IMG/VR virus record: IMGVR_UViG_3300017987_000001
Location: 143,858 to 207,857 of that record
Strand: one strand, 5' to 3'
Length of the DNA stretch: 64,000 bases
Shown: positions 14,046 to 63,850 of the stretch, one piece after another
Position numbering within the stretch: position 1 is the first letter of the stretch
How the letters are laid out: the number at the start of each line of letters is the position of its first letter
The notes under the pieces: generated by a model
Database searches by the model: none
What the model saw: the letters and a program-made list of their open reading frames with translations, nothing else
Told to the model about the DNA's origin: nothing
Translations under genes and position numbers: made by a program

Positions 14046-16820
14046 TCAGCCAGTCTGTGCGCCGGTCATCTGTTGTAGTGCTTGGAACCCTCCCTCAAGC
14101 TTCGCCTGATCCCTTGTCTCGTCCATCTTCTGGATAACGAGCGCGTGAAGCGTCTGATCGGACTTCTTGAGGTCCGTGAGCTGCGACTTGCGGATCTCGT
14201 ACGGCATACCAAGCATCTGCATCGCAATCTGCTCAGCCTGCGATTGCATATCGTCGGGTGTCGTTCCACCCGCCGGAGAGGGCTGTCCAGCAGGAGCAGC
14301 GCCTGCGGGAGCGCCACCAGCAGGAGCGGGCTGACCGGGCATCTGCGGCTGGTCTGCGGCAGCGAAGATCTGCTCGAACTCCTGCTGCTTCGCCTGATCC
14401 TCCTGAAACTTCTTGCTCTCGTCGGCGAACTGCTTCTCTTCCTCGAACATCCGCCGTATTTCCTCGCGCCAGTCGATTCCATACGGTGCGAAGGCAGTCT
14501 GCTTCGAGATCTGCTGCGAGGCGGCGAGCTGAAGCTGGATCTGCTTCTTCTCGATGTCCTCGGCGAGCGTCGTCGGCTGGAGGCGTCCGCTGATCTTCTC
14601 CCAGTTCATCAGGTCGGTAATCGCCTCGAAGAACCAGTTGACCCACCCGTTCATGGCGGAGACGAAATGCGTCCACGTGCGCTCAAACAGACGCAGCGCC
14701 ATCGGAGCTGCCTGCACCTGCAGCGTGCCACGGTACATCTCAGCCGGAACGCCCATAGCATTGAGGAACTCGTCCATGCCTGCATTGATGAGGTCAACGG
14801 GAGCGAGATCCTGCCCCTCGCCACCAAGAGCGCGGTAGTCGATGGGGAACGGGAGTGCATTCCACTGAGTCGGATCCTTGCGATGCTTGCGAATCATGCC
14901 CATCACGCGGCCCATGAACGAACCAGCATTGACGTGATACAGCGGGTCGACCTCGCCAGTGCCCGAGCCCTTGCCCGGCGTGATGATGCGGAATGGAATG
15001 ATGTAGTCGAGACCGATGGCCTCGTTGTAGCGCTTGAGCACCTGCACGTACCACGCCTGCTTGAAGTTGGCGAGGATGCGCGGAATGCCCCATCCGGCAT
15101 TACGCAAACCGGCGACGCACTCCTCTTTGAAGTGGTAGATGATGCCCTTGTTGAACTGGAACCACTTGTCGGTGCGCAAGCACTCGACTATTTCCCACGG
15201 CGTCGACTCAAGGTAGAACGGGTTGCCCTTGCGGACCTCTCGCTTGATGTCCGAAGGCGGGATCCAATAGTACGCAGTCTCGTGAGAAATTGGGTGGTGC
15301 TGGAGACGGACCTCGTGGGGCGACCATCGAATGATTCGTGGCTTATCCTCTTCCACGGAACGGCGATCGACACGTTCGAATACTCCCGTCCACCCACACT
15401 GTGGACACGTCGCGTTGAACTGCCAGTTCTCAAAGGAGTATTCCATCCGACCGAGCGTGCGTTCGTGGAAACACTTACGACAGCGAAGATATCGGCGGAA
15501 TGGAATGTGTACGGAAGTGAATGAATTACCGTAGCACTGCTTCGTCAGAATGCCGTTATCGATAACGAACGTATGCGTCTCCATCTCGACACAGCAGAAT
15601 ACCTCGTCAACAATACCTGTTCCGCGTACTTCCTTGACTCCGATATACTGACCATAGTTCGTGGGCTTGTAGTTCTCCTCGAACTTGGCTCTATGCGCTG
15701 GGATCAGGAAGTCTTGCGGCAACATCGACTGCTTAAGCAACGTGACGTAATAAATGTCACTGTCGTATACGTCGACGTGTCCGTCATCACGAACAAACTC
15801 CGCCGTACGCCGCTGACTTCGGACAGGACCAGCGGACATACCGATACGAGGAAGCTGTCGAACAATTGCCTCCAACGTAGCGGAGGATGCCTGCGTCAGC
15901 ATCGCACAACCGTGCGTGTCCACAGTACCATCAGCAGACAGGAAGCCGCATACGAAGCCGTACCAATACTCCGCACTCATGTCATTCGACGGGAGCGCCT
16001 TGTAGTGCGGCGGCAGACCAAACATCTCGACTTTTCCAGAGTCCGGCGTGTAGTCGTCTACATCCCAGTACGCCAGCATGACCGCGTCCTTCTCCCCGAA
16101 GAACGTAGCCTTTGCCTGCTTGCCCTTGTTGTACAGTGAGCCGTCACCAAACGTGAAGCCGTGGCGAACGCCTTCCTTGAAGTCATCACCCCGCTCGGGG
16201 CGAGGAGCTACGACTCTGGGGATCCTGTATCCCTTCCGCAGTTCAGCTGTAGAAACTTCAACCTCTTTGTCAGAGCAGTTCTTGGCGATCCACCGATGCT
16301 CGGGCGTAGCCAGCACGGTGCGGCCGTCGCTAAACTCAACTTCGAGAAGTTCTTGATGACCAAAGGACTTGAACTCTGCGGGGCGATACACGCCATCTTT
16401 CGATAGCACGTCAACAGTCTTACCCACAAGCTCGCGAAGCTTGAAGACGCCACCGCGCGTGACCGCTTCAGTGTCGCCGTGGAAACACATGTAATCGTCG
16501 CCAATAGTAGCGAGCACGTCGAGGATCTTGATCTGCTTATTTAGGAAGTCTTCGTACTTCTCCTTCTCGTCATCCGATGCATCCTGCAGTTCGATCTTCG
16601 TCAGGAAGTAGCGAACGACACGCTGCGCAGCCATGCGAAACGTGCCGTTGGTTACCCACAGATACTCACACCAGCGCATGACGTCGTAGAGCGAGCGCGG
16701 CATCTGTGTGGATGCGTAGTCAAAGAACGGGTCGGGGAATGCTTGAGAATACCGGTTCGCCGTACTGTTGGCTGAACCGACACCGGTCGTTGGGAACATC
16801 GGGAAGACAGCTTCGGCCAT
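14046..16820 (-). CDS. probable phage portal protein interrupted by an intein
   Basis: About 607-aa extein; YGNSF next to the intein, GWGIPRILA segment, Gln/Pro/Ala-rich tail. Portal call rests on resemblance only. Confidence 0.55.
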   Translation of the reverse strand: MAEAVFPMFPTTGVGSANSTANRYSQAFPDPFFDYASTQMPRSLYDVMRWCEYLWVTNGTFRMAAQRVVRYFLTKIELQDASDDEKEKYEDFLNKQIKILDVLATIGDDYMCFHGDTEAVTRGGVFKLRELVGKTVDVLSKDGVYRPAEFKSFGHQELLEVEFSDGRTVLATPEHRWIAKNCSDKEVEVSTAELRKGYRIPRVVAPRPERGDDFKEGVRHGFTFGDGSLYNKGKQAKATFFGEKDAVMLAYWDVDDYTPDSGKVEMFGLPPHYKALPSNDMSAEYWYGFVCGFLSADGTVDTHGCAMLTQASSATLEAIVRQLPRIGMSAGPVRSQRRTAEFVRDDGHVDVYDSDIYYVTLLKQSMLPQDFLIPAHRAKFEENYKPTNYGQYIGVKEVRGTGIVDEVFCCVEMETHTFVIDNGILTKQCYGNSFTSVHIPFRRYLRCRKCFHERTLGRMEYSFENWQFNATCPQCGWTGVFERVDRRSVEEDKPRIIRWSPHEVRLQHHPISHETAYYWIPPSDIKREVRKGNPFYLESTPWEIVECLRTDKWFQFNKGIIYHFKEECVAGLRNAGWGIPRILANFKQAWYVQVLKRYNEAIGLDYIIPFRIITPGKGSGTGEVDPLYHVNAGSFMGRVMGMIRKHRKDPTQWNALPFPIDYRALGGEGQDLAPVDLINAGMDEFLNAMGVPAEMYRGTLQVQAAPMALRLFERTWTHFVSAMNGWVNWFFEAITDLMNWEKISGRLQPTTLAEDIEKKQIQLQLAASQQISKQTAFAPYGIDWREEIRRMFEEEKQFADESKKFQEDQAKQQEFEQIFAAADQPQMPGQPAPAGGAPAGAAPAGQPSPAGGTTPDDMQSQAEQIAMQMLGMPYEIRKSQLTDLKKSDQTLHALVIQKMDETRDQAKLEGGFQALQQMTGAQTG
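15537..16487 (-). mobile_element. intein (317 aa) with LAGLIDADG homing endonuclease, Gln-terminal
   Basis: Starts C112 (CFHGDT); block B ATPEHRW; LAGLIDADG-like GFTFGDGS and GFLSADG; block F VFCCVEMETHTF; ends ILTKQ|C. Confidence 0.92.
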
Positions 16821-29278: not shown

Positions 29279-29353
29279 TGGAACGTCCGGCGGGGGTCGA
29301 ACCCGCATCTTGCGCCTTTAGAGAGCGCCGCACTCCCATTGTGCTACGGACGT
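29279..29353 (-). tRNA. amber suppressor tRNA (anticodon CUA)
   Basis: Acceptor ACGTCCG/CGGACGT, D stem GCAC/GTGC, anticodon arm GCGCT-CTCTAAA-GGCGC, T arm GCGGG-TTCGACC-CCCGC, U73, encoded CCA. Confidence 0.9.
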
Positions 29354-43268: not shown

Positions 43269-46166
43269 TTACCAGTACTTTTCAGGCACTCCGATTTGCT
43301 CTAAGCTCTCTTTCTTTGGCTTCTCACCCCATCTCAGCATGATCTCCGGATCGATACCGAAGCTGAAGTTCAGCCGGGGAACCACCGCGTTGTGCACCAT
43401 GCACAGCGGGAGCACGAACTCCACGACATGTTCGATCTGTTCCACCGGCACTTCGAGCATGACTGCATCGTGAATCGCAAGCAGGATCCGATACGCACAC
43501 CACGGATTCTGCTGCTTATAGAGCCACAGGTTGTACAGCGCCGTCGACAGCGTGTCGGCGACGACGGACTGAATCGGGAAGTTGACTGCCTCCCGCTCCT
43601 GCGCTGCCATCACGGACTCGTCGGGCGACACGAAGAAGTGTCGTCGCCGTCCGTACGGGTTCTCGATCCAGTGCGGGTGATTGCGTACACAACTCTTGCA
43701 CCAGTTCACGTAGTCGCGAACCTTGCTATAGCGTTCGTACCACGCATCGATAATCCGTTGAGCCTTGTCGGCATCCATGTTGGCCGCGCCCTTGGTTTCA
43801 CGATTGACTTGACGGGCGATAGCCTTCGCTCCGCGCTGATACGGGATGCCGAAGTTGATATTCTTCGCAGCGACGTACAGGTGCGGGAAGGCTTTCGATA
43901 CCTCCTCGTAGCTGCACGGTGCGCGAAGGATGTCAACGGCAACCTTAGCGTGGAGCTTAATGGGGCCAAGAGCATCAGCGATGAGATTCTTGTCGCCGCT
44001 GATGTAGGCAAGCCCACAGACCTCGGCCGACTTGTAGTCAGCTTCGATGAGGACGTAGCCATCAGGCGCAATCACACACGATCTGAGCGACTGAACATCC
44101 TCGCCCATGATCATCTTGTACTTGCTCTCCTGACGCTTACTCCAGTTCTGCAGGTTGGGTCTGCTCGATCCGTACCGGCCCGTCTCCTTCGTCTGGGAGA
44201 TCATGGTACGAATACGCCCGTCGGGATCGATATGCCCGAGGAGACCTTCGATGTACATGTTCGGATCGTAGGTCATGTCCTCAGGAACTTCGGTCATTCC
44301 GGCGGGGGGACGAAGGAAGTTCTTCGTCATCTGGTCGATCGTCTGGAAGTTGCTGATCATCTCGACGACCGGCTGCACCTTCTCTGGAGCGTCGGCTGAG
44401 AGCAGCTCCAGTACTTCGGAATCAACGGCAGGCTTGACACGCGCACGCTCCTTCTCGGGCAGCGACATCACGCGATCCCACGTCATGGCGGGCTTACCGG
44501 TAGACTTCACCGGCATCAGCCCGAAGCCACCGTCTTCAGGCGACCCGAACAGCAACTCCGCCTTCTGCTTGTACGAGCGCGGGTTGAAGTCCGGATTACC
44601 GACGCCCTTGCGTACGTCTTCGAGAAGCTCCTGCTTCTTCTGAACGTAACGCCAGAGCATCGACACCATACGATCTGCGTCGATGAGGATACCGTTCTGC
44701 TCCATCTCGAAGATGGGCAGATTCGCGGGCATGACGACGTTGTAGAACAGATCACGCACGCTCTCGTTGCCCGGCTGATCGAGCAAGCCGGTCAGTGTGA
44801 GGAAGCAGCGGAACGTGCAGTCGGCATCTTTCGCGCCATACGGAATGATCAGTTCGGCCGGAATGCCCATATACCCGGACGTCTTGGTTACGATCGCCGG
44901 ATGCGCCTTGATCCAGTTCTCCAGATCGTAGTCGTATCGTCCGAGCGGGGTGTAACGAACCGACAGCCCGGTGAGGGAGTGGTCCGCGCTCTCGTTCAGA
45001 AGGTGATCTGCAAGCATCGTGTCGAAGTACAGATACTTCATGAACGGAACGCCAATGTCCTCCAGCCACGGGGCGTCAGCGCGAGCGAAGTGACCGATCA
45101 ACCGCACGCCGGGCCGATCGATCAGCCGCTTCAGCTCGTGAGCCACGCCGATGAGTTCGGTGGATTCGGATGAGTTGTTGAAGACCCACTCGCCGTTCTC
45201 CTCGCGCAGCACGATAACCGCCGCGAAGCCTGCTGCCCACGAGAACTGAATCGTGCGCAGCTTGCCACCCGACTGAGGGGACTGACCACCCCACTCGCAG
45301 TCGAACGCGAAGTACTTCACATCGGACTCGATGAGCAGATCGACCAACTTGATCAGCTGCGACTGCGTCTCGATGGTGAAGTAGTTCTCGGCTTCTCCCG
45401 GCGCCGTACCCGGGGCGTCGGCCATCAGTCCTATGAACCGACGGATGTCCTCTTCCAGTCCGGGTGTGAGCGACGGCTCCCGCAGCGACTGCGCGGGATT
45501 AACCGTCCCGATAACCGAGACCTTCGTGGGGTCGTCATTGCGCCCCGTCTCCGTCGGTATCTTGCCCATCTCTTGCGGGTCGAACACGATGTTCGCACCA
45601 CGCACCGACTTCAGTGTCGCCTTCCTGCCGAAGAACGCTTTCACGGCGTCCGTGCCGAGCAGGAGCATGTACTTGGGCCGCACGATGCGGAACTCGTACA
45701 TGAGCAGCGGCAGGCAGTCCTTGATGTGGTCTGCCCTGAGATTTCTCCCGCCGTCTGGCGGGATGAAGCGACACACGTTCGTCACGTATGCCGAGTTGAG
45801 ATTCACGTTCAGGTTGGTGAGAATGCGAGTCAGCTCTTCCCCGGCGTTACCGCACAGGTTCCTGCCGTACTCGACCTCTTCGGTACCCGGACGCTTGCCG
45901 ACGATCATCACGTCGGACTTGACCGGACCATACTGACCGCTTCCCCAAACGTGACCGGGGATCATCGTTACGGGCGCGTAGGTGTGCGGCACGTCGCCCT
46001 TGCCCTTCACATCGACCACGTGAAACGTCATGACGTTATGCAGTGCGCGATCGAAGAGTCTGGACGAGGGCGTACCCAGCACGCGCGAGTTGTAATCCCA
46101 CGTGTCAGTGAACGCCAAGTCGTCGAGGCCGATCTCGGCCAACGAGACTTCGACTTCTTCACTCAT
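43269..46166 (-). CDS. polA: family A DNA polymerase with N-terminal UDG-like and 3'-5' exonuclease domains
   Basis: UDG-like VMIVGKRPG and YVTNVCRF; exonuclease FDCE, DTM, YGAKDA; polymerase TGRYGSSRPNLQN, ADYKSAE, AKNINFGIPY, VNFPIQS, IHDA. Confidence 0.93.
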   Translation of the reverse strand: MSEEVEVSLAEIGLDDLAFTDTWDYNSRVLGTPSSRLFDRALHNVMTFHVVDVKGKGDVPHTYAPVTMIPGHVWGSGQYGPVKSDVMIVGKRPGTEEVEYGRNLCGNAGEELTRILTNLNVNLNSAYVTNVCRFIPPDGGRNLRADHIKDCLPLLMYEFRIVRPKYMLLLGTDAVKAFFGRKATLKSVRGANIVFDPQEMGKIPTETGRNDDPTKVSVIGTVNPAQSLREPSLTPGLEEDIRRFIGLMADAPGTAPGEAENYFTIETQSQLIKLVDLLIESDVKYFAFDCEWGGQSPQSGGKLRTIQFSWAAGFAAVIVLREENGEWVFNNSSESTELIGVAHELKRLIDRPGVRLIGHFARADAPWLEDIGVPFMKYLYFDTMLADHLLNESADHSLTGLSVRYTPLGRYDYDLENWIKAHPAIVTKTSGYMGIPAELIIPYGAKDADCTFRCFLTLTGLLDQPGNESVRDLFYNVVMPANLPIFEMEQNGILIDADRMVSMLWRYVQKKQELLEDVRKGVGNPDFNPRSYKQKAELLFGSPEDGGFGLMPVKSTGKPAMTWDRVMSLPEKERARVKPAVDSEVLELLSADAPEKVQPVVEMISNFQTIDQMTKNFLRPPAGMTEVPEDMTYDPNMYIEGLLGHIDPDGRIRTMISQTKETGRYGSSRPNLQNWSKRQESKYKMIMGEDVQSLRSCVIAPDGYVLIEADYKSAEVCGLAYISGDKNLIADALGPIKLHAKVAVDILRAPCSYEEVSKAFPHLYVAAKNINFGIPYQRGAKAIARQVNRETKGAANMDADKAQRIIDAWYERYSKVRDYVNWCKSCVRNHPHWIENPYGRRRHFFVSPDESVMAAQEREAVNFPIQSVVADTLSTALYNLWLYKQQNPWCAYRILLAIHDAVMLEVPVEQIEHVVEFVLPLCMVHNAVVPRLNFSFGIDPEIMLRWGEKPKKESLEQIGVPEKYW

Positions 46167-47286
46167 ACGACCTCCTATGGCAGGCGAGCTGGAACGCTCC
46201 CGTGTCGAAGATCGGGTGCTTATAGCCTGCGCGGTCGGCGTACTTGAGGACATAGACCCACAAGTCCTCCGACCAGTAGCTGCCGGGATCCTTCTCCGGC
46301 AGGCGTACCTCCAGCATGCCCCATCGACAAAGCGAGGTGAGCGAGTCACGAAGCTTCGTGTACTTCTTTCGCTTGTCCTCTGTATCCATCACGTCAGCAT
46401 CGGACATCAGGATGATCCCTGTCTCGCCCCACGCTGCGTGAATCAGTTGACGCTGACGGTCCCCGGCGCTATCTCCGAAGATGTTCACGCCCTGACCGCC
46501 TACCGACCACACGTCGGTAATGCCCTCCATGATCACGCCGACCGGATACTGGCTGGCCCAATCATAGTTGTAGAGCACCTGCGTCTTGCGCATGCCCGGC
46601 ATCGTGAAGTACTTCGGCAGGTTCTCGGGGACATTGTCACCGATGTACCGTGCCTGATACCCCATGAGTCTCGACGATTGCCGGATCGGGAGAATGATCC
46701 TGTCATCTACGAGCGGATGAGGATCATTCGGACAGTACGCCACCTGATGAATCTCCACGAGCCGCTGCACGTTGAAACCCCGTGTCGTTTCGAGGTAGTA
46801 CCGTGCAGGGTGATGCGGATCGAGCTGCGTAATGGGAACCAGCTTCTCGGGGAGCGTCGGGACGACAGGCTTGGGAGCCTCGCCCAGATGAACCGGCAGC
46901 GACACAGTATGTCGCAGCAGCGGACTGATCAGCTTACGCAGATCCTCCTGCCGCACGCGCTTGTCGTATCTGTCTGCTGCCCGGTTCAGGTCGCAACCGT
47001 CGTTGAAGCAGTTCGCCAGTCCGAGTCCGAACTTCACCTTCGTAGCCGGATCTTCGGTATCCCAGCGATGATTGATCCAGAGTCGGAACCGCGTGTCTCC
47101 GCAAAATGGACAACACACGCGGTACTCTTCGCCGTGATAGTCCTTATCGATCACGATCGTCTCACGCTGCGTGATGAAGTCAGGCCGTACCGTGTAGCGC
47201 ATCGCTTCACCCTCCTTGGCGATCTTCACGCCGGAGGGGAATGCAAGCTTGAGCGCATTGAAGAGCTGTGGATTCAGCGGCATCAC
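46159..47286 (-). CDS. DNA primase (Zn finger + TOPRIM)
   Basis: CPFC, MEGITDVW, DAD. Confidence 0.88.
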   Translation of the reverse strand: MMPLNPQLFNALKLAFPSGVKIAKEGEAMRYTVRPDFITQRETIVIDKDYHGEEYRVCCPFCGDTRFRLWINHRWDTEDPATKVKFGLGLANCFNDGCDLNRAADRYDKRVRQEDLRKLISPLLRHTVSLPVHLGEAPKPVVPTLPEKLVPITQLDPHHPARYYLETTRGFNVQRLVEIHQVAYCPNDPHPLVDDRIILPIRQSSRLMGYQARYIGDNVPENLPKYFTMPGMRKTQVLYNYDWASQYPVGVIMEGITDVWSVGGQGVNIFGDSAGDRQRQLIHAAWGETGIILMSDADVMDTEDKRKKYTKLRDSLTSLCRWGMLEVRLPEKDPGSYWSEDLWVYVLKYADRAGYKHPIFDTGAFQLACHRRSYE

Positions 47287-57429: not shown

Positions 57430-57674
57430 TACCTTTGTTCAGCGCCGACGTGGTCTTCGTGCGGCGTGTCCACCCAGAAGACCTTCTCCATCGGTATCCG
57501 TCTGACGATCGGGCGTCCCCATTCATCCTTGTCGGGTAGCTCGATGCAGAAGCATCCTGCCTTCACGTAGAAGCGCCGCACGTCCGGGTACCGTTTCGGC
57601 GTACTCGCTGGGTCGAATACGAACTCCACCCAGTACGGCGCCTTCTTCTTCGCTTTCATATCCCAAACGTCCAT
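57429..57674 (-). CDS. hypothetical protein
   Basis: Last base of the TAG is G1 of tRNA-Gly. Confidence 0.55.
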   Translation of the reverse strand: MDVWDMKAKKKAPYWVEFVFDPASTPKRYPDVRRFYVKAGCFCIELPDKDEWGRPIVRRIPMEKVFWVDTPHEDHVGAEQR

Positions 57675-58798
57675 TTCGCCACGTCTATCGCCTTTGGATC
57701 ACCGATGGCCTTCTTCGGGTCGTCCGAAAGCTTGACCACCGGGACGTTGTCGATCTCGACCAGCTTGATGACGATGTTGGCTGATATGGTGCCGGGCACG
57801 TCGTTCGTCAGATTCGTACCGATCCCGAATGCGACCTTGGTCTGCTGAGCGAACTCGCGCTGAAGGCTGATGCACTTCGGCACGTCCAGCGAGTCGCTGA
57901 AGATGATGGTCTTCGACATCGGATCGACGCGTAGCCACTTGTAGTGATTGATCATCCGCCGCGCGAACTCCTTCGAGTTACCGGAATCCTGACGGACACC
58001 GTCGAACAGCCGAGCAAGCTTGCCGTCGAAGTCCTGCAGGAATGCGCTGGTGCCGAACGTGTCGGGGAGCGCGATGCCGAGATCGCCCTCATAGACGTCG
58101 TTCCATGCCTCCAATGCGAACTTGTTGGCGTGTCGCAAACCTACCAGCGCGGAAATCGCTTGGATCCACTCGTGCGCCATCGTACCGATGGGCTTGACCC
58201 CGTGCTTCATGGCGAAGTGTACGTTGCTCGTTCCGATGAAGTTCGGGAACTTCTTCAGCGCTCCTACGACCATGTCCTGCATGTGGTACGAGTAGCGCCG
58301 CCGCGTTCCGAACTCGGCGAACCGGCAGTCTTCGGCAAGCAGCATGCCCGCCTTCTTCAGCGCCTGCTCCTTCTGCTCGTCCCAGTTGGGGCGAGGCTGC
58401 TGCTGCGCCATGATTTGCTCGGTGACGATCGCGAGCAGTGGCACCTCCCAGTAGATAGTTTCGGCCCACAGGCCACTGATCTCGATCTCCGTACCAGCGT
58501 CGGTCGGGGTGATCTTCACGAGGTGCGGATTCGGCTGAAAGTGCTCCAGCCAGTCGATGTACCAGCCTTCCAAGAAGGGGCACTTCTCACGGAGGAACAG
58601 CGACTCCTTGTCGGTCAGCTTCGCGCGGCTGTAGCCCCACATGTGAGAGCTGACGTACTTCGCCATCACCTTCGTGACGGGCTGATGAGCATTTCGGTTG
58701 ACGAACCTGTACGTAGCCTGCGCCTTGGGGAACTTCTTGAGGACAGCTTGCCCCATCGTAAGCTTGTACAGGTCGGTATCAAGGATCGAAGGTTCCAC
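57656..58798 (-). CDS. pncB: nicotinate phosphoribosyltransferase
   Basis: LDTDLYKLTM, EFGTRRR, GTSN, GTMAHEW, VRQDSG, FSDSL, FGIGT, KLSD. Confidence 0.93.
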   Translation of the reverse strand: MEPSILDTDLYKLTMGQAVLKKFPKAQATYRFVNRNAHQPVTKVMAKYVSSHMWGYSRAKLTDKESLFLREKCPFLEGWYIDWLEHFQPNPHLVKITPTDAGTEIEISGLWAETIYWEVPLLAIVTEQIMAQQQPRPNWDEQKEQALKKAGMLLAEDCRFAEFGTRRRYSYHMQDMVVGALKKFPNFIGTSNVHFAMKHGVKPIGTMAHEWIQAISALVGLRHANKFALEAWNDVYEGDLGIALPDTFGTSAFLQDFDGKLARLFDGVRQDSGNSKEFARRMINHYKWLRVDPMSKTIIFSDSLDVPKCISLQREFAQQTKVAFGIGTNLTNDVPGTISANIVIKLVEIDNVPVVKLSDDPKKAIGDPKAIDVAKWTFGI

Positions 58799-59421
58799 TA
58801 CAGCTGCAGCCGTGCGGTGTGCTCGATGAGCACGCCCGCCTTGGCCATCTCCTCGATCGCTTCGACCGTCGTCTTCGGATCCACGCCCTTGCACGCGTCC
58901 AACAGGACGCTTGCGACGTAGCCCCTCTTGACGGCGTCGAGCGCGGTCGCCTTGACGCAGTAGTCCGTGGCAAGGCCGCAGATGATGAGGTTGTCATGCG
59001 GAGGCGTACCGGCGTGCGCCAACGTCTGCAGCATGGCCGTCGGATTCCTGCCCGCGTCCTCGAAGCCGGAATAGCTGTCGAACTGCGGGTTGGTACCCTT
59101 CTCGACGATGAGCTTGCCCTCAACGACCAGCAGCTGACTGTGCAGCTCGTTGCCGGGAGTCTCGACCACGCAGTGATCGGGCCAGAACATCTGTGGCTGC
59201 CCGTTCAGCACGCCCATCGTGAATGGCTCCGTGCCCTGCATCGACGCGAAGCTCTTGTGCATCGGCGGGTGCATGTCCTTCGTGTAGATGATGGGCAATC
59301 GCGAGAAGGCGAACTTGTTGATGACCCGATTGACGACCGGGAGTATGTGGACGGCATCCGGTACGGCAAGGCTGCCGCCGATGAAGTCGTTCTGCATGTC
59401 GACGACTATGAGCGTCGGCAT
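58798..59421 (-). CDS. pncA: nicotinamidase
   Basis: VDMQNDF..GSLAV, DMHP, WPDHCV, YSGF, GLATDYCV. Confidence 0.95.
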   Translation of the reverse strand: MPTLIVVDMQNDFIGGSLAVPDAVHILPVVNRVINKFAFSRLPIIYTKDMHPPMHKSFASMQGTEPFTMGVLNGQPQMFWPDHCVVETPGNELHSQLLVVEGKLIVEKGTNPQFDSYSGFEDAGRNPTAMLQTLAHAGTPPHDNLIICGLATDYCVKATALDAVKRGYVASVLLDACKGVDPKTTVEAIEEMAKAGVLIEHTARLQL

Positions 59422-60203
59422 TATGTTCCTCTCTGGAAGACGAGCAGACCCGCGCCCGACGGCGGGATCTCGCGCTTGTGCTGCGTGCGCTGATAAATGT
59501 CCAATACCTTCTTGTGGAGATCTTCGAGACCCTCGGGGATCGTGTCGCCCTCACTAATGGCGTACACGATCTTGTCGAGGTCGTCGTAGGACGCACCGAG
59601 TTCCTCTTCGTCCGTCTGGCCTTCCCACAGCCCCGCGCTCGGAGCCTTGGTGATGATTGCTTCGGGAACGCCCTTAACGCGCGCGAGCTGCCGCACTTCG
59701 CCCTTCAGCAGCCCCATGATCGGCTCGATGTCGATGCCGCCATCGCCGTACTTCGTGAAGTAGCCCAGCACGTCCTCGGTGAGGTTGGTCGTGCCGACGA
59801 CAAGCAGGTTGTGCGCGTTCGCCACGGCGTAGAGCGCCACCATACGAAGCCGCGACTTCGTGTTCGCGCGGGCCATCTTGCTGCTTCGCAAGTGCCCCGA
59901 AAGCGCACCCAGCTCCAGCGTCTTGAACGTCGGGAACAGGTCGATCTGCTCGGTCGCGATACCGAACGTCTTCGCGACCTCCCGCGCGTGCTCGGCGCCG
60001 ATCTTCGAGCTTTCACAGTCGAGGATCAGCCCGCGTACGCGATTCGCGCCGAGCGCGCCTACGCACAGCGCTGCGACGAGCGACGAGTCCACACCGCCGC
60101 TCAAGCCGACGACGACGCCGCTCGCGCCGACGCCCGCGATGTAGTTCCTGATCCAGTCCTGAATGGCCTCGATCGTCTTCTGTTCGTCGAGTCTCTCAAT
60201 CAC
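59421..60203 (-). CDS. nadE: NH3-dependent NAD+ synthetase
   Basis: GLSGGVDS, NTKSRLRM, GYFTKYGDGG, KAPSAGLWEGQTDE. Confidence 0.95.
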   Translation of the reverse strand: MIERLDEQKTIEAIQDWIRNYIAGVGASGVVVGLSGGVDSSLVAALCVGALGANRVRGLILDCESSKIGAEHAREVAKTFGIATEQIDLFPTFKTLELGALSGHLRSSKMARANTKSRLRMVALYAVANAHNLLVVGTTNLTEDVLGYFTKYGDGGIDIEPIMGLLKGEVRQLARVKGVPEAIITKAPSAGLWEGQTDEEELGASYDDLDKIVYAISEGDTIPEGLEDLHKKVLDIYQRTQHKREIPPSGAGLLVFQRGT

Positions 60204-62541: not shown

Positions 62542-62617
62542 TGGTTGCCCCGGGAGGACTTGAACCTCCAACTTCCTGATCCAGAATCAGGCGTTCTGCC
62601 AATTGAACTACGGGGCA
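62542..62617 (-). tRNA. tRNA-Gln(CUG)
   Basis: CCTGA-TTCTGGA-TCAGG; CCA. Confidence 0.92.
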
Positions 62618-62618
62618 A

Positions 62619-62695
62619 TGGTGGCCGCACTGGGAATCGAACCCAGAACCTCCCGATTAAGAGTCGGGGACTCTACGCAATTGAGTTACACGGCC
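62619..62695 (-). tRNA. tRNA-Lys(CUU)
   Basis: CCCGA-CTCTTAA-TCGGG; CCA. Confidence 0.92.
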
Positions 62696-62703
62696 GGTAT
62701 ATA

Positions 62704-62779
62704 GAGAAGGCGACGAAGAGGTGTAGAGATCCGTTTACATGGCAATTGTATGTAATCCCTACGGGCATTCGCCTTACTC
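62704..62779 (-). ncRNA. Y-RNA-like element 1 (short)
   Basis: AAGGCGA-AUG...GUAGGGAUU/GAUCUCUAC...UUCG-UCGCCUU. Confidence 0.65.
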
Positions 62780-62784
62780 ACAGA

Positions 62785-62862
62785 TGGTGGGAACGACCGG
62801 ATTTGAACCGGTAACACCGAGTGCTTCAAACTCGTGCTCTACCTGAGTTGAGCTACGTTCCC
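62785..62862 (-). tRNA. tRNA-Phe(GAA)
   Basis: CGAGT-TTGAAGC-ACTCG; CCA. Confidence 0.9.
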
Positions 62863-62889
62863 AAATTCGTTTTCCCGCTCCGCAAGAGA

Positions 62890-62965
62890 TGGTAGGCGCG
62901 GCAGGATTCGAACCTGCGATACCCAGTTTGTAAGACTGGTGTCTTAGCCGCTAGACTACGCGCCT
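62890..62965 (-). tRNA. tRNA-Val(UAC)
   Basis: CCAGT-CTTACAA-ACTGG; CCA. Confidence 0.92.
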
Positions 62966-62975
62966 GCCCAAGTAT

Positions 62976-63085
62976 GTGAACAGCGACAAGAAGTGGAGAG
63001 TGATAGCCTCCATAGGCTTCCCCCGGTAATCGGGGGATCAGGAATTGAACTTGATGTACACCCTACCGGGCATTCGCTGTATCAC
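62976..63085 (-). ncRNA. Y-RNA-like element 2
   Basis: ACAGCGA-AUG...GGGUGUACAU...CUUG-UCGCUGU. Confidence 0.65.
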
Positions 63086-63088
63086 GCG

Positions 63089-63176
63089 TGGTGGGGGCAG
63101 ACGGAGTCGAACCGCCAAAGCCTTTCGGCGGGAGATTTACAGTCTCTTGGGATCGCCACGTTCCCTGTGTACCCCC
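63089..63176 (-). tRNA. tRNA-Tyr(GUA), atypical acceptor/D-arm junction
   Basis: GAGA-CTGTAAA-TCTC; long variable arm; CCA. Confidence 0.82.
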
Positions 63177-63184
63177 AGTGAAGC

Positions 63185-63320
63185 TGCGTCGACTAGAAAT
63201 GGAAGAGTCGTTTTTGCGCTCTACCCACTGAGCTACCGCCGCATCAAGAGCGGCGGGCTGGACTCGAACCAGCGACCTCATCCTCCGTATGGATGTAGAC
63301 CCGTCCGGGCATTCGACGCA
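63185..63320 (-). ncRNA. Y-RNA-like element 3 with circularly permuted tRNA module (YrlA-like)
   Basis: UGCGUCGA-AUG...; T arm GCUGG-UUCGAGU-CCAGC; acceptor CCGCCGC/GCGGCGG closed by UCUUGAU; then D arm; ...CUAG-UCGACGCA. Confidence 0.75.
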
Positions 63321-63328
63321 ACATTTAT

Positions 63329-63397
63329 GTGAACGGACGACGAATAGGTAGGAGTCACCTTTATAATGTAGACCCCAAGGACATTCGTCCGTGTCAC
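63329..63397 (-). ncRNA. Y-RNA-like element 4 (short)
   Basis: ACGGACGA-AUG...GGGGUCUACAU...ACUCC...UUCG-UCGUCCGU. Confidence 0.65.
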
Positions 63398-63402
63398 GCT
63401 TG

Positions 63403-63482
63403 TGGTGGTGCGAGCTGGAGTCGAACCAGCGACCTCCTGTGTATCAGACAGGTGCTCTAACCAAGGGCTGAGCTACCGCACC
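63403..63482 (-). tRNA. tRNA-Ile(GAU)
   Basis: CCTGT-CTGATAC-ACAGG; CCA. Confidence 0.92.
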
Positions 63483-63524
63483 ACTTACGTTTGTGCATTC
63501 CGTATTCGATTTTCAAAGAGCAGC

Positions 63525-63596
63525 GTCGGCGACGAGTTGGGTTGTAGAGATCTGGTATGCTTAAATGGCATGTAATCCCTACGTTCATTCGCCGAC
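63525..63596 (-). ncRNA. Y-RNA-like element 5 (short)
   Basis: GUCGGCGA-AUG...GUAGGGAUU/GAUCUCUAC...CUCG-UCGCCGAC. Confidence 0.65.
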
Positions 63597-63607
63597 ACAC
63601 TTCTAGA

Positions 63608-63757
63608 GTGAAGCAGGCACGACAAGAATTGACGAGTCAACCCCGTCAGGGTCAGCTGCTCTGCCACTGAGCTATACGCCCATCAATGGGCGCAGAAGGA
63701 TTCGAACCCCCGACCCGCTGATTATGATGTAGACCCGATCAGCATTCGTACCTACAC
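63608..63757 (-). ncRNA. Y-RNA-like element 6 with circularly permuted tRNA module (YrlA-like)
   Basis: AGGUACGA-AUG...; UCAGC; T arm with UUCGAAU; acceptor UGCGCCC/GGGCGUA closed by AUUGAU; D arm; GCUGA; ...CUUG-UCGUGCCU. Confidence 0.75.
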
Positions 63758-63773
63758 TCGATTGTCAAAGAGC

Positions 63774-63850
63774 TGGTGGATCCGCTCGGACTCGAACCGA
63801 GGACCGTCCGCTTATGAGGCGGATGCTCTAACCGACTGAGCTACGGATCC
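63774..63850 (-). tRNA. tRNA with CAU anticodon (Ile2 or elongator Met)
   Basis: TCCGC-CTCATAA-GCGGA; CCA. Confidence 0.9.

What the first reader, a model, noticed from the sequence alone, without database searches (positions are those of the whole stretch)
62704..63757. Six Y-RNA-like elements interleaved with tRNAs
Seen: six spacers share one architecture with different, compensating sequences. Each has a terminal helix ending CGA, then AUG, an inner helix (GGGUC/GACUC or GGGAUU/GAUCUC), a conserved UACAU, a variable insert, and a pyrimidine-rich strand ending Y(U/C/A)G-UCG that closes the helix. Terminal stems: AAGGCGA/UCGCCUU, ACAGCGA/UCGCUGU, UGCGUCGA/UCGACGCA, ACGGACGA/UCGUCCGU, GUCGGCGA/UCGCCGAC, AGGUACGA/UCGUGCCU. 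Known: bacterial Y RNAs bind the Ro60 orthologue Rsr through such a bulged terminal helix (5' GNCGAA.G and 3' CUUG, as I recall the consensus). Inference: an expanded phage Y RNA repertoire, released by tRNA processing, that tethers or titrates Ro60/PNPase. No rsr gene is in this window.
Basis: partly seen in the sequence, partly recalled or inferred. Interest (0 to 1): 0.9.

Follow-up and report, generated by a model that had tools for sequence, protein, structure and literature searches.

The report
Six phage Y RNAs among tRNAs
Six small structured RNA genes packed between the tRNA genes of an uncultivated 208-kb phage are real relatives of bacterial Y RNAs, the partners of the Ro60 protein, and the phage carries its own Ro60 gene 46.6 kb away; the RNA family is known, but this six-copy layout inside a tRNA array is unusual.

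Summary
On the minus strand of 62707-63752 lie six elements (E1-E6). Each has a 7-bp terminal helix ending CGA/UCG, an AUG-containing internal loop, a 7-bp inner helix with an invariant G-U pair, a UACAU motif, a variable apical module and a pyrimidine-rich 3' loop. They alternate with seven tRNAs, at gaps of 9-43 nt.

The Y RNA reading is largely supported:
- Rfam YrlA matches E4 and E1, though below its curated cut-off.
- A covariance model trained only on RNAs beside Ro60 genes in other phages finds exactly these six in 64 kb.
- Related elements sit on the Ro60 strand in all 145 matches across 79 phage Ro60 loci.
- The same RNA motif found 79 bacterial loci, and 63 of them have a Ro60 gene.

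The window has no rsr gene, but the phage genome does: a 555-aa Ro60 orthologue lies 46.6 kb upstream on the same strand, linked on one contig.

E1 and E4 carry a permuted tRNA-like domain. E2, E3 and E6 are minimal forms, and E5 is intermediate.

Multi-copy Y RNA arrays, often mixed with tRNAs, recur in large Ro60-encoding phages, including the cultured Myxococcus phage Mx1. Binding, processing and function are inferred. Verdict: a new variant of a known kind, of moderate interest.

The parts
63616..63752 (-). E1: Y RNA-like element of the YrlA type. It has the terminal helix AGGUACGA/UCGUGCCU, a CGAAUG loop, the inner helix GGGUC/GACUC and UACAU. Its permuted tRNA-like module has a T arm (GGUUCGAAUCC), a 7-bp acceptor-like hairpin, U8 and a D arm (GCUCAGUGGCAGAGC).
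   Evidence: Rfam YrlA 35.5 bits, full model. R1 96.7 bits. R2 (no window sequences in training) 71.8 bits, E 5e-14. Fold z -4.27. Alignment.
63526..63595 (-). E2: minimal Y RNA-like element. It has the terminal helix GUCGGCGA/UCGCCGAC, the inner helix GUAGGGAUU/AGAUCUCUAC and a small apical hairpin, with no tRNA-like module.
   Evidence: R1 37.3 bits, E 1.7e-7. R2 38.8 bits, E 2.9e-6. Fold z -4.27.
63334..63391 (-). E3: the smallest Y RNA-like element. It has the terminal helix ACGGACGA/UCGUCCGU and the inner helix GGGGUC/GACUCC closed by a short loop.
   Evidence: R1 38.5 bits, E 8e-8. R2 37.0 bits, E 7.5e-6. Fold z -3.36.
63186..63319 (-). E4: Y RNA-like element of the YrlA type. It has the terminal helix UGCGUCGA/UCGACGCA and a tRNA-like module with a T arm, a perfect 7-bp acceptor-like hairpin (CCGCCGC/GCGGCGG), U8-A9 and a D arm (GCUCAGUGGGUAGAGC).
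   Evidence: Rfam YrlA 48.4 bits, E 1.9e-9, model 1-114. R1 108.3 bits. R2 80.1 bits, E 5.7e-16. Its T-arm region is 25/27 identical to the neighbouring tRNA-Ile.
62980..63080 (-). E5: intermediate Y RNA-like element. It has the terminal helix ACAGCGA/UCGCUGU and the inner helix GGGUG/CACUC. Its apical module keeps a three-hairpin layout but has lost the T-loop and D-loop consensus.
   Evidence: Rfam YrlA 27.3 bits. R1 49.2 bits, E 1.8e-10. R2 47.1 bits. Alignment with low posterior probability in the apical part.
62707..62775 (-). E6: minimal Y RNA-like element. It has the terminal helix AAGGCGA/UCGCCUU, the inner helix GUAGGGAUU/GGAUCUCUAC and a small apical hairpin.
   Evidence: Rfam YrlA 18.1 bits. 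R1 48.1 bits, E 3.3e-10. R2 50.1 bits, E 6.5e-9.
63774..63850 (-). tRNA-Met(CAU), directly 5' of E1 with a 21-nt gap; it encodes its own CCA.
63403..63482 (-). tRNA-Ile(GAU), between E2 and E3.
63090..63176 (-). Candidate tRNA-Tyr(GUA) with a long variable arm, between E4 and E5. It falls below ARAGORN's default threshold.
   Evidence: Rfam tRNA-Sec model 32 bits. ARAGORN at -ps90 calls tRNA-Tyr(gta).
62785..62965 (-). tRNA-Val(UAC) at 62890-62965 and tRNA-Phe(GAA) at 62785-62862, between E5 and E6.
62619..62695 (-). tRNA-Lys(CUU), 11 nt 3' of E6.

Best explanation
E1-E6 are six paralogous phage Y RNAs of the YrlA lineage. They are the RNA partners of the Ro60 (Rsr) protein that this phage encodes 46.6 kb upstream on the same strand.

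Shown:
- All six share one module: a 7-bp terminal helix ending CGA/UCG, a CGAAUG-containing internal loop, a 7-bp inner helix with an invariant G-U pair, UACAU, and a pyrimidine-rich 3' loop.
- This module matches the Ro60-binding end of YrlA.
- Relatives of these elements are found almost only beside Ro60 genes.
- The apical module varies: a permuted tRNA-like domain in E1 and E4, a degenerate three-hairpin form in E5, and a short hairpin or loop in E2, E3 and E6.

Inferred:
- The six RNAs are made as part of one long tRNA precursor, because gaps are 9-43 nt with no promoter or terminator matches. They would be freed when the host's tRNA-maturing nucleases cut out the neighbouring tRNAs.
- Phage Ro60 then binds the conserved helix and loop.
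- The different apical modules tether or gate Ro60 toward different partners. PNPase and tRNA-recognising enzymes are the documented precedents.
- The outcome would be remodelling of RNA decay, quality control or counter-defence during infection.
For: - Rfam YrlA full-length matches to E4 and E1.
- Model R2 was built only from 145 elements next to Ro60 genes in other phage contigs. It finds exactly these six in the window (80.1 to 37.0 bits, E 6e-16 to 7.5e-6), two in phage Mx1, and the published mycobacteriophage ET08 YrlA, with nothing else at E<=1e-3 in 158 kb.
- In 79 phage Ro60 loci (985 kb) all 145 matches lie on the Ro60 strand. After I dropped matches that overlap an ARAGORN-called tRNA, 135 remained, at a median of 609 nt from the gene.
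- The Ro60-adjacent elements were first seen in L012, L013 and L015.
- The RNA motif alone retrieved 79 bacterial loci, and 63 of them have a Ro60 ORF. I read adjacency on the same strand in examples and did not tabulate it. Some of those copies exceed the YrlA curated cut-off, at 74.2, 70.5 and 70.2 bits.
- Covariation across 129 distinct sequences: 96.1% of cells paired, against 37-50% when slid; 737 cells changed on both sides, against 198 in shuffles.
- The same pattern holds within the six copies alone.
- The phage Ro60 scores 35.2 bits on Pfam vWA_Ro60 (cut-off 27.7). It matches D. radiodurans Rsr 2nvo at E 3.8e-16 and phage phiLo Ro60 at E 3.6e-12, and its MIDAS D-x-S-x-S motif is conserved.
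- One ENA contig carries both rsr and the array.
[quoted passage not shown] The phiLo Ro60 binds two phage Yrl RNAs and forms a complex with host PNPase (PMC12135203).
Against: - No expression, RNA-end or binding data exist for this uncultivated phage.
- All six score below Rfam's YrlA gathering score of 69 bits.
- The elements are not within 4 kb of rsr, the criterion used in the 2014 survey. Genes on the opposite strand lie between rsr and the array, so the two are not co-transcribed.
- Four of the six lack the tRNA-like domain that defines YrlA.
- The A5 and A6 alignments were fitted to the model structure, which favours that structure.
- The 79 phage loci include near-duplicate contigs, so the counts are not fully independent.
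- The host and its PNPase and Ro60 status are unknown.
Confidence: 0.8

Rival explanations
1. The elements are Y RNA mimics that act on the host's Ro60 rather than the phage's. They would be decoys or sponges that titrate host Rsr/PNPase complexes instead of building a phage RNP.
For: The array is unlinked from the phage rsr, at 46.6 kb with opposite-strand genes between. The phage Ro60 clade is close to bacterial Ro60: the phage-derived HMM scores 600-770 bits on bacterial ORFs, so cross-binding is conceivable.
Against: The phage keeps an intact Ro60 with a conserved MIDAS motif. In 48 of 79 related loci the same RNAs sit directly beside the phage Ro60 gene on its strand, the pattern expected of cognate partners. 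The host is unknown.
Confidence: 0.08
2. Only E1 and E4 are functional Y RNAs. E2, E3, E5 and E6 are decaying duplicates that have lost the tRNA-like domain.
For: Four of six lack the T-arm and D-arm consensus. A clearly degenerate copy with broken helices lies 42 nt downstream of rsr (L099 7638-7730, 9.6 bits), so decay does occur in this genome.
Against: Across all six copies helix 1 is 100% paired and helix 2 is 92.9% paired, through compensatory changes, and the loop motifs are invariant. About half of the Ro60-adjacent elements in other phages (65 of 129 distinct rows) are also of the short type and keep both helices. Bacteria also have a second, simpler Y RNA, YrlB or Yrn2 (PMC4201824).
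Confidence: 0.07
3. The elements are Ro60-independent parts of the tRNA operon, such as processing or stability hairpins that guide RNase E, RNase III or RNase P cleavage between tRNAs.
For: They sit in tRNA spacers at 9-43 nt gaps, and no promoter or terminator matches lie inside the array.
Against: The same elements occur in multiple copies beside Ro60 genes in loci with no tRNA at all. Examples are L045/L046 with five, L057 with four, L070 with four and L086/L098 with three. Most of the roughly 40 tRNA spacers in this phage lack them. The conserved loop motifs match the Ro60-binding motif, not a known nuclease site.
Confidence: 0.05

Closest known systems
YrlA, the bacterial and phage Y RNA-like RNA (Rfam RF02553; Chen et al. 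2014, PMC4201824)
   Same: Both have a 5'/3' terminal helix carrying (G)NCGAAUG, an asymmetric internal loop, a second helix and a CUAC/UACAU motif. E1 and E4 also share the circularly permuted tRNA-like domain (T arm, 7-bp acceptor-like hairpin, D arm), as in M. smegmatis YrlA. Relatives are encoded beside Ro60 on the same strand. E4 and E1 score as well as or better than the published mycobacteriophage ET08 YrlA on the Rfam model (48.4 and 35.5 bits against 37.4).
   Different: All six score below the Rfam gathering score of 69. There are six paralogues rather than one or two. They are embedded in a tRNA array 46.6 kb from rsr instead of within 4 kb. Three copies have no tRNA-like domain and one has only a degenerate version.
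YrlB and Yrn2, the second, simpler Y RNAs of S. Typhimurium, M. smegmatis and D. radiodurans (PMC4201824)
   Same: They are short Ro60-bound RNAs that keep the Ro60-binding end but lack a full tRNA-like module, and they are co-encoded with a YrlA-type RNA. E2, E3 and E6 fit this description.
   Different: I found no sequence homology to those RNAs. The short forms here are plainly derived from the same module as E1 and E4, since one covariance model aligns all six end to end.
Thermus phage phiLo Yrl1 and Yrl2 with phiRo60 (PMC12135203; PDB 9L5Y, 9KOP)
   Same: A phage-encoded Ro60 with several phage-encoded Y-like RNAs carrying a CGAA motif in a stem-bulge-stem; binding and a ternary complex with host PNPase were shown. 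The window phage's Ro60 matches phiRo60 at E 3.6e-12.
   Different: phiLo has two RNAs directly upstream of the Ro60 gene. Here there are six, unlinked from the gene and mixed with tRNAs.
Escherichia phage Bas63 gp130, a Ro60-like protein upstream of a tRNA stretch (PMC11482910)
   Same: A phage Ro60 homologue is associated with a tRNA gene cluster. The authors guessed that some annotated tRNAs may be Y RNAs and showed that gp130 counters the ppl defence system.
   Different: No Y RNAs were defined there. I did not examine Bas63.

Membership tests
YrlA / bacterial Y RNA | GNCGAAN0-1G motif near the 5' end (PMC4201824) | tested here: met
   CGAAUG is invariant in 6 of 6. The full GNCGAA is present in E2, E3, E4 and E6. 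E1 has U and E5 has A at the first G.
YrlA / bacterial Y RNA | The 5' and 3' ends pair into a helix that carries the Ro60 site, followed by an internal loop and a second helix | tested here: met
   Helix 1 is 100% paired and helix 2 is 92.9% paired in the six copies, with compensatory changes. Across 129 distinct relatives 96.1% of cells are paired.
YrlA / bacterial Y RNA | A tRNA-like domain with T arm, D arm and acceptor-like stem | tested here: inconclusive
   Met in E1 and E4: T loop UUCGARU, D loop with GG, 7-bp acceptor-like hairpin. It is degenerate in E5 and absent in E2, E3 and E6.
YrlA / bacterial Y RNA | Rfam RF02553 gathering score of 69 bits | tested here: not met
   The best score is 48.4 bits, for E4. 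The published ET08 phage YrlA also scores only 37.4 bits. Bacterial copies with the same motif range from 38.7 to 74.2 bits.
YrlA / bacterial Y RNA | Encoded within about 4 kb of the Ro60 gene on the same strand (the survey criterion of PMC4201824) | tested here: not met
   The strand is the same but the distance is 46.6 kb. Only a degenerate copy lies next to rsr. The criterion is met by relatives in 48 of 79 phage Ro60 loci. 63 of 79 bacterial loci found by the RNA motif hold a Ro60 ORF within the fetched stretch of at most 8 kb.
YrlA / bacterial Y RNA | Physical binding to, and stabilisation by, Ro60/Rsr | not testable with these tools
   This needs EMSA or RIP with the phage Ro60.
Ro60 / Rsr protein (the partner, L099:5929-7596:+, outside the window) | TROVE HEAT-repeat ring plus a vWA domain with a MIDAS motif | tested here: met
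   Pfam vWA_Ro60 scores 35.2 bits against a cut-off of 27.7. TROVE scores 22.8 bits against a cut-off of 23, which is borderline. phmmer matches 2nvo_A Rsr at E 3.8e-16 over residues 37-477 and 9l5y/9kop at E 3.6e-12. D-x-S-x-S is invariant in the alignment with five other phage Ro60 proteins. The fold was not modelled.
tRNA | Cloverleaf with an anticodon arm, detected by tRNA models | tested here: not met
   ARAGORN calls none of the six. The Rfam tRNA model gives only 16.5 bits on part of E4, against a cut-off of 29.

The most novel reading that the evidence does not exclude
Large Ro60-encoding phages may carry batteries of Y RNA paralogues that are co-expressed with their tRNA arrays. Each paralogue would keep the same Ro60-binding end but carry a different apical module. 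A single phage Ro60 could then be directed to several different host or phage enzymes (exoribonucleases, tRNA-repair or tRNA-modifying enzymes). Alternatively, the tRNA-like copies could serve as decoys or sensors for tRNA-targeting defence nucleases. This would be a modular RNA-adaptor system for taking over host RNA metabolism and for counter-defence. Current annotation misses it because the RNAs score below Rfam's cut-off and can lie far from rsr.
Probability: 0.2. Interest if true: 0.8.

Novelty: new variant of a known kind. Interest (0 to 1): 0.5.

Why it matters
Ro60 and Y RNAs are conserved from bacteria to humans, yet what the RNAs' variable modules do is still largely open. A phage that keeps six paralogues with one common Ro60-binding end and six different apical modules is a natural experiment in module diversification.

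The survey done here indicates this is a recurrent trait of large uncultivated phages:
- 48 of 79 Ro60 loci have at least one element.
- After dropping matches that overlap a called tRNA, the most in one locus is seven.
- 13 loci have tRNAs interleaved with the elements.
- None of the elements in the 11 loci I tested reaches the Rfam cut-off.

Two practical points follow. Searches restricted to the neighbourhood of rsr or to Rfam gathering scores will miss such RNAs. At least one is currently annotated as a 40-aa hypothetical protein in Myxococcus phage Mx1. Mx1 is cultured and has a laboratory host genus, so the prediction can be tested directly.

Tried and rejected
- A first Python descriptor (CGAA-G plus any closing 9-mer) was far too permissive and gave hundreds of chance hits. 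It was replaced by a stricter one and then by covariance models.
- Looking for relatives through the 102-aa protein inside the tRNA array returned only the same genome.
- GenBank phages hold no DNA relative of the region; only tRNA matches came back.
- The MAFFT alignment of the short elements (A3) put the 3' strand of helix 2 out of register, so I did not use it for a model.
- Rfam at gathering thresholds finds no YrlA in the window or in 11 related Ro60 loci.
- Two look-ups failed because the longest-ORF start codon was not the called start. They succeeded with the ATG and MANK starts.
- The two Wolin-lab reviews and the supplementary tables of Chen 2014 are not held. I therefore could not check how many Y RNAs per phage, or what tRNA adjacency, were tabulated there.
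- I rejected the tRNA-pseudogene and plain spacer-hairpin readings (see the rival explanations).
- I rejected a close relationship of the whole phage to Mx1: only Ro60 is similar (44.9%, 47%). PolA has no close isolate relative, at 24% identity or less.
- About 110 kb of the 208-kb genome was not scanned for further copies. The exact-pattern scan of IMG/VR found only E1 and E4 of the tRNA-like type in this contig.
Full report
**What is there**

The window is about 59% G+C phage DNA. It carries a PolA-UDG fusion, a DnaB-like helicase and NAD salvage genes, and 32 tRNA genes, all on the minus strand.

Reading the minus strand of 62600-63800, the order is: tRNA-Cys, tRNA-Met, E1, E2, tRNA-Ile, E3, E4, a sub-threshold tRNA-Tyr(GUA), E5, tRNA-Val, tRNA-Phe, E6, tRNA-Lys. 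Gaps between neighbours are only 9-43 nt.

Helix-to-helix coordinates (all minus strand):

| Element | Coordinates |
|---|---|
| E1 | 63616-63752 |
| E2 | 63526-63595 |
| E3 | 63334-63391 |
| E4 | 63186-63319 |
| E5 | 62980-63080 |
| E6 | 62707-62775 |

**Is it more than chance?**

- Each element folds with its ends paired, with z-scores from -3.4 to -4.3.
- Aligned to a covariance model, the six share four features:
  - a 7-bp helix 1 ending CGA/UCG;
  - a 7-nt 5' internal loop beginning AUG;
  - a 7-bp helix 2 with an invariant G-U pair, followed by UACAU;
  - a 9-12-nt pyrimidine-rich 3' loop ending (Y)UNG.
- Counting the six alone, 96.3% of cells pair, helix 1 pairs 100%, and all four of its variable positions change on both sides. 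No shuffle in 500 reached the observed values, and slid controls pair 34-57%.
- Model R1 gives exactly six full-length matches in window plus flanks. All other matches are partial T-arm hits on tRNAs.

**What it is**

- Rfam's YrlA model (RF02553, Y RNA-like) aligns E4 at 48.4 bits (E 1.9e-9) and E1 at 35.5 bits (E 1.1e-5) over the whole model. E5 scores 27.3 and E6 18.1. All are below the curated 69 bits.
- E1 and E4 contain the circularly permuted tRNA-like domain that characterises YrlA. It has a T arm with UUCGARU, a 7-bp acceptor-like hairpin, U8, and a D arm with the GG loop.
- The published Ro60-recognition motif GNCGAAN0-1G (PMC4201824) is present as CGAAUG in all six.

**Evidence from relatives**

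- An exact-pattern scan of IMG/VR with the E1/E4 motifs found ten other large viral contigs of 43-424 kb, with several copies per locus.
- In three of them the elements lie directly beside a gene with Pfam vWA_Ro60 and TROVE domains, on the same strand.
- Using those proteins as a query returned 79 phage Ro60 loci.
- Model R1 found 145 matches (E<=1e-4) in these 985 kb, all on the Ro60 strand.
- After I dropped matches that overlap an ARAGORN-called tRNA, 135 remained, at a median of 609 nt from the gene. Of the 79 loci, 48 have at least one, 37 at least two, 14 at least four and 4 at least six.
- Thirteen loci have tRNAs interleaved with the elements, and 27 have a tRNA within 500 nt.
- Roughly half of the elements have the T arm and half are short forms. 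Across 129 distinct sequences 96.1% of cells pair, and 737 cells changed on both sides against 198 in shuffles; slid controls pair 37-50%.
- Model R2 was built only from these Ro60-adjacent elements, with no window sequence. It again finds exactly the six, at 80.1, 71.8, 50.1, 47.1, 38.8 and 37.0 bits. It also finds the published mycobacteriophage ET08 YrlA just upstream of its Ro gene.
- The same pattern in 185,579 bacterial and archaeal genomes gave 79 loci, 63 of which have a Ro60 ORF. Some of those RNAs exceed the YrlA cut-off (74.2, 70.5 and 70.2 bits), and Nannocystis genomes carry five or six tandem copies.
- The window's elements therefore sit inside the score range of a family whose members are bona fide YrlA.

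**The partner protein**

- The same genome (207,857 and 207,878 bp in two JGI assemblies) does encode a Ro60 orthologue. It scores 35.2 bits on vWA_Ro60 (above the cut-off) and 22.8 on TROVE (borderline). It matches D. radiodurans Rsr at E 3.8e-16 and phage phiLo Ro60 at E 3.6e-12, and its MIDAS D-x-S-x-S motif is conserved.
- One ENA contig (k141_1448909) carries both features. The rsr stop codon lies about 46.6 kb upstream of E1 on the same strand, with opposite-strand genes between them.
- No tRNA and no intact Y-like element lie within 6 kb of rsr.
- A degenerate copy sits 42 nt downstream of rsr. It has an exact 5' motif but broken helices, and scores 9.6 bits with filters off.

**How it most likely works**

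Shown: homology to YrlA; a conserved, covarying Ro60-end module; variable apical modules; an exclusive genomic association of the family with Ro60; and a Ro60 gene in the same genome.

Inferred:
- The elements are co-transcribed with the tRNAs. The gaps are tight, and no sigma-70-like promoter matches lie inside the array. The five terminator-like matches equal the number expected from shuffles, and two of them are the elements' own 3' ends.
- They are released by tRNA-maturing nucleases.
- The phage Ro60 binds the CGAAUG helix and loop.
- The apical modules tether or gate Ro60 toward effectors.

Precedents are Rsr/Y RNA/PNPase in D. radiodurans and Salmonella, RNase P and CCA-enzyme recognition of M. 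smegmatis YrlA (PMC4201824), the phiLo Ro60-Yrl-PNPase complex (PMC12135203), and the Ro60-like gp130 of phage Bas63, which sits by a tRNA stretch and counters the ppl defence (PMC11482910).

**Comparison and novelty**

Phage Y RNAs are known. Chen 2014 reported 22 phages, nearly all with the RNA within 4 kb of rsr, and phiLo has two. Four things differ here:
- there are six paralogues;
- they are embedded in a tRNA array unlinked from rsr;
- four of the six lack a proper tRNA-like domain;
- all score below the Rfam cut-off.

The arrangement is not unique to this genome:
- 31 of the 79 Ro60 loci have no adjacent element.
- UViG_3300013121_000005 has its elements about 25 kb from rsr, and UViG_3300029893_000001 has extra copies 20-33 kb away.
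- The cultured Myxococcus phage Mx1 has the closest isolate Ro60 (44.9% identity). It has two elements in its tRNA array 11.3 kb upstream of rsr, one of them under an annotated 40-aa CDS.

I found no paper in the held library that describes such arrays. The key reviews and the 2014 supplementary tables were not available, so prior tabulation cannot be excluded.

**Verdict**

It is a new variant of a known kind, of moderate interest. It has a clear experimental route through Mx1 or recombinant Ro60.

Noticed in passing
L099:7638-7730 (+), outside the window; same genome, 42 nt downstream of the rsr stop codon: A degenerate seventh Y-like copy. It has an exact CCGAAUG-N7-GGGAGUACAU 5' motif and a GUCG 3' motif, but two mismatches in each helix (R2 9.6 bits with filters off). 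It may be a relic of an ancestral rsr-adjacent Y RNA.
   Followed up: partly
window 63090-63176 (-); also L001:6894-6977 (+), beyond the window end: Two type-II tRNA-like genes missed by ARAGORN at default settings. The first is called tRNA-Tyr(GUA) at a relaxed threshold and can be read with a perfect 7-bp acceptor stem (GGGGGUA/UGCCCCC) and encoded CCA. The second was only seen as a 31-bit match to the tRNA-Sec model.
   Followed up: partly
window 29279-29353 (-): A tRNA with a CUA anticodon, labelled 'Pyl' by ARAGORN and scoring 63 bits on the Rfam tRNA model. It is a potential amber suppressor and lies far from the main tRNA array. TAG still ends 40 of 115 long minus-strand open stretches, so general TAG recoding is not evident.
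   Followed up: partly
window 57656-60203 (-): An NAD salvage cluster lies within the tRNA array. It comprises nicotinate phosphoribosyltransferase (57656-58894), an isochorismatase/nicotinamidase-family gene (58798-59421) and NAD synthase (59421-60203). Phages may use it to rebuild NAD+ against NAD-depleting defences.
   Followed up: no
window 63274-63300 versus tRNA-Ile 63403-63482 (-): The stretch of E4 from the variable region through the T arm to the start of the acceptor strand is 25/27 identical to the same part of the neighbouring phage tRNA-Ile; the next best tRNA scores 19. This hints at gene conversion with, or derivation from, the adjacent tRNA, but T arms are constrained, so the evidence is weak.
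   Followed up: partly
L101:45515-45630 (Myxococcus phage Mx1, OR576727.2): A full-length Y-like element (R2 56.2 bits) overlaps the annotated CDS WNM70101.1 (45524-45646, hypothetical protein), which is probably a mis-annotation. A second element at 45163-45300 is unannotated.
   Followed up: partly
L116:2793-3606 (Nannocystis radixulma) and L131:111-721 (N. pusilla): Tandem arrays of five to six YrlA-like RNAs next to the bacterial rsr gene, at 38.7-64.5 bits. Multi-copy Y RNA arrays are therefore not confined to phages.
   Followed up: no
L074:9039-9405 and L091:7928-8324: tmRNA genes (108.7 and 69.1 bits) lie among the Y-like elements and tRNAs beside phage Ro60 genes in two other viral contigs.
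   Followed up: no
window 43269-46349 (-) and 14046-16820 (-): The family A DNA polymerase carries an N-terminal uracil-DNA-glycosylase-superfamily domain. A 924-aa ORF has a weak intein-splicing match (23 bits, below the cut-off).
   Followed up: no
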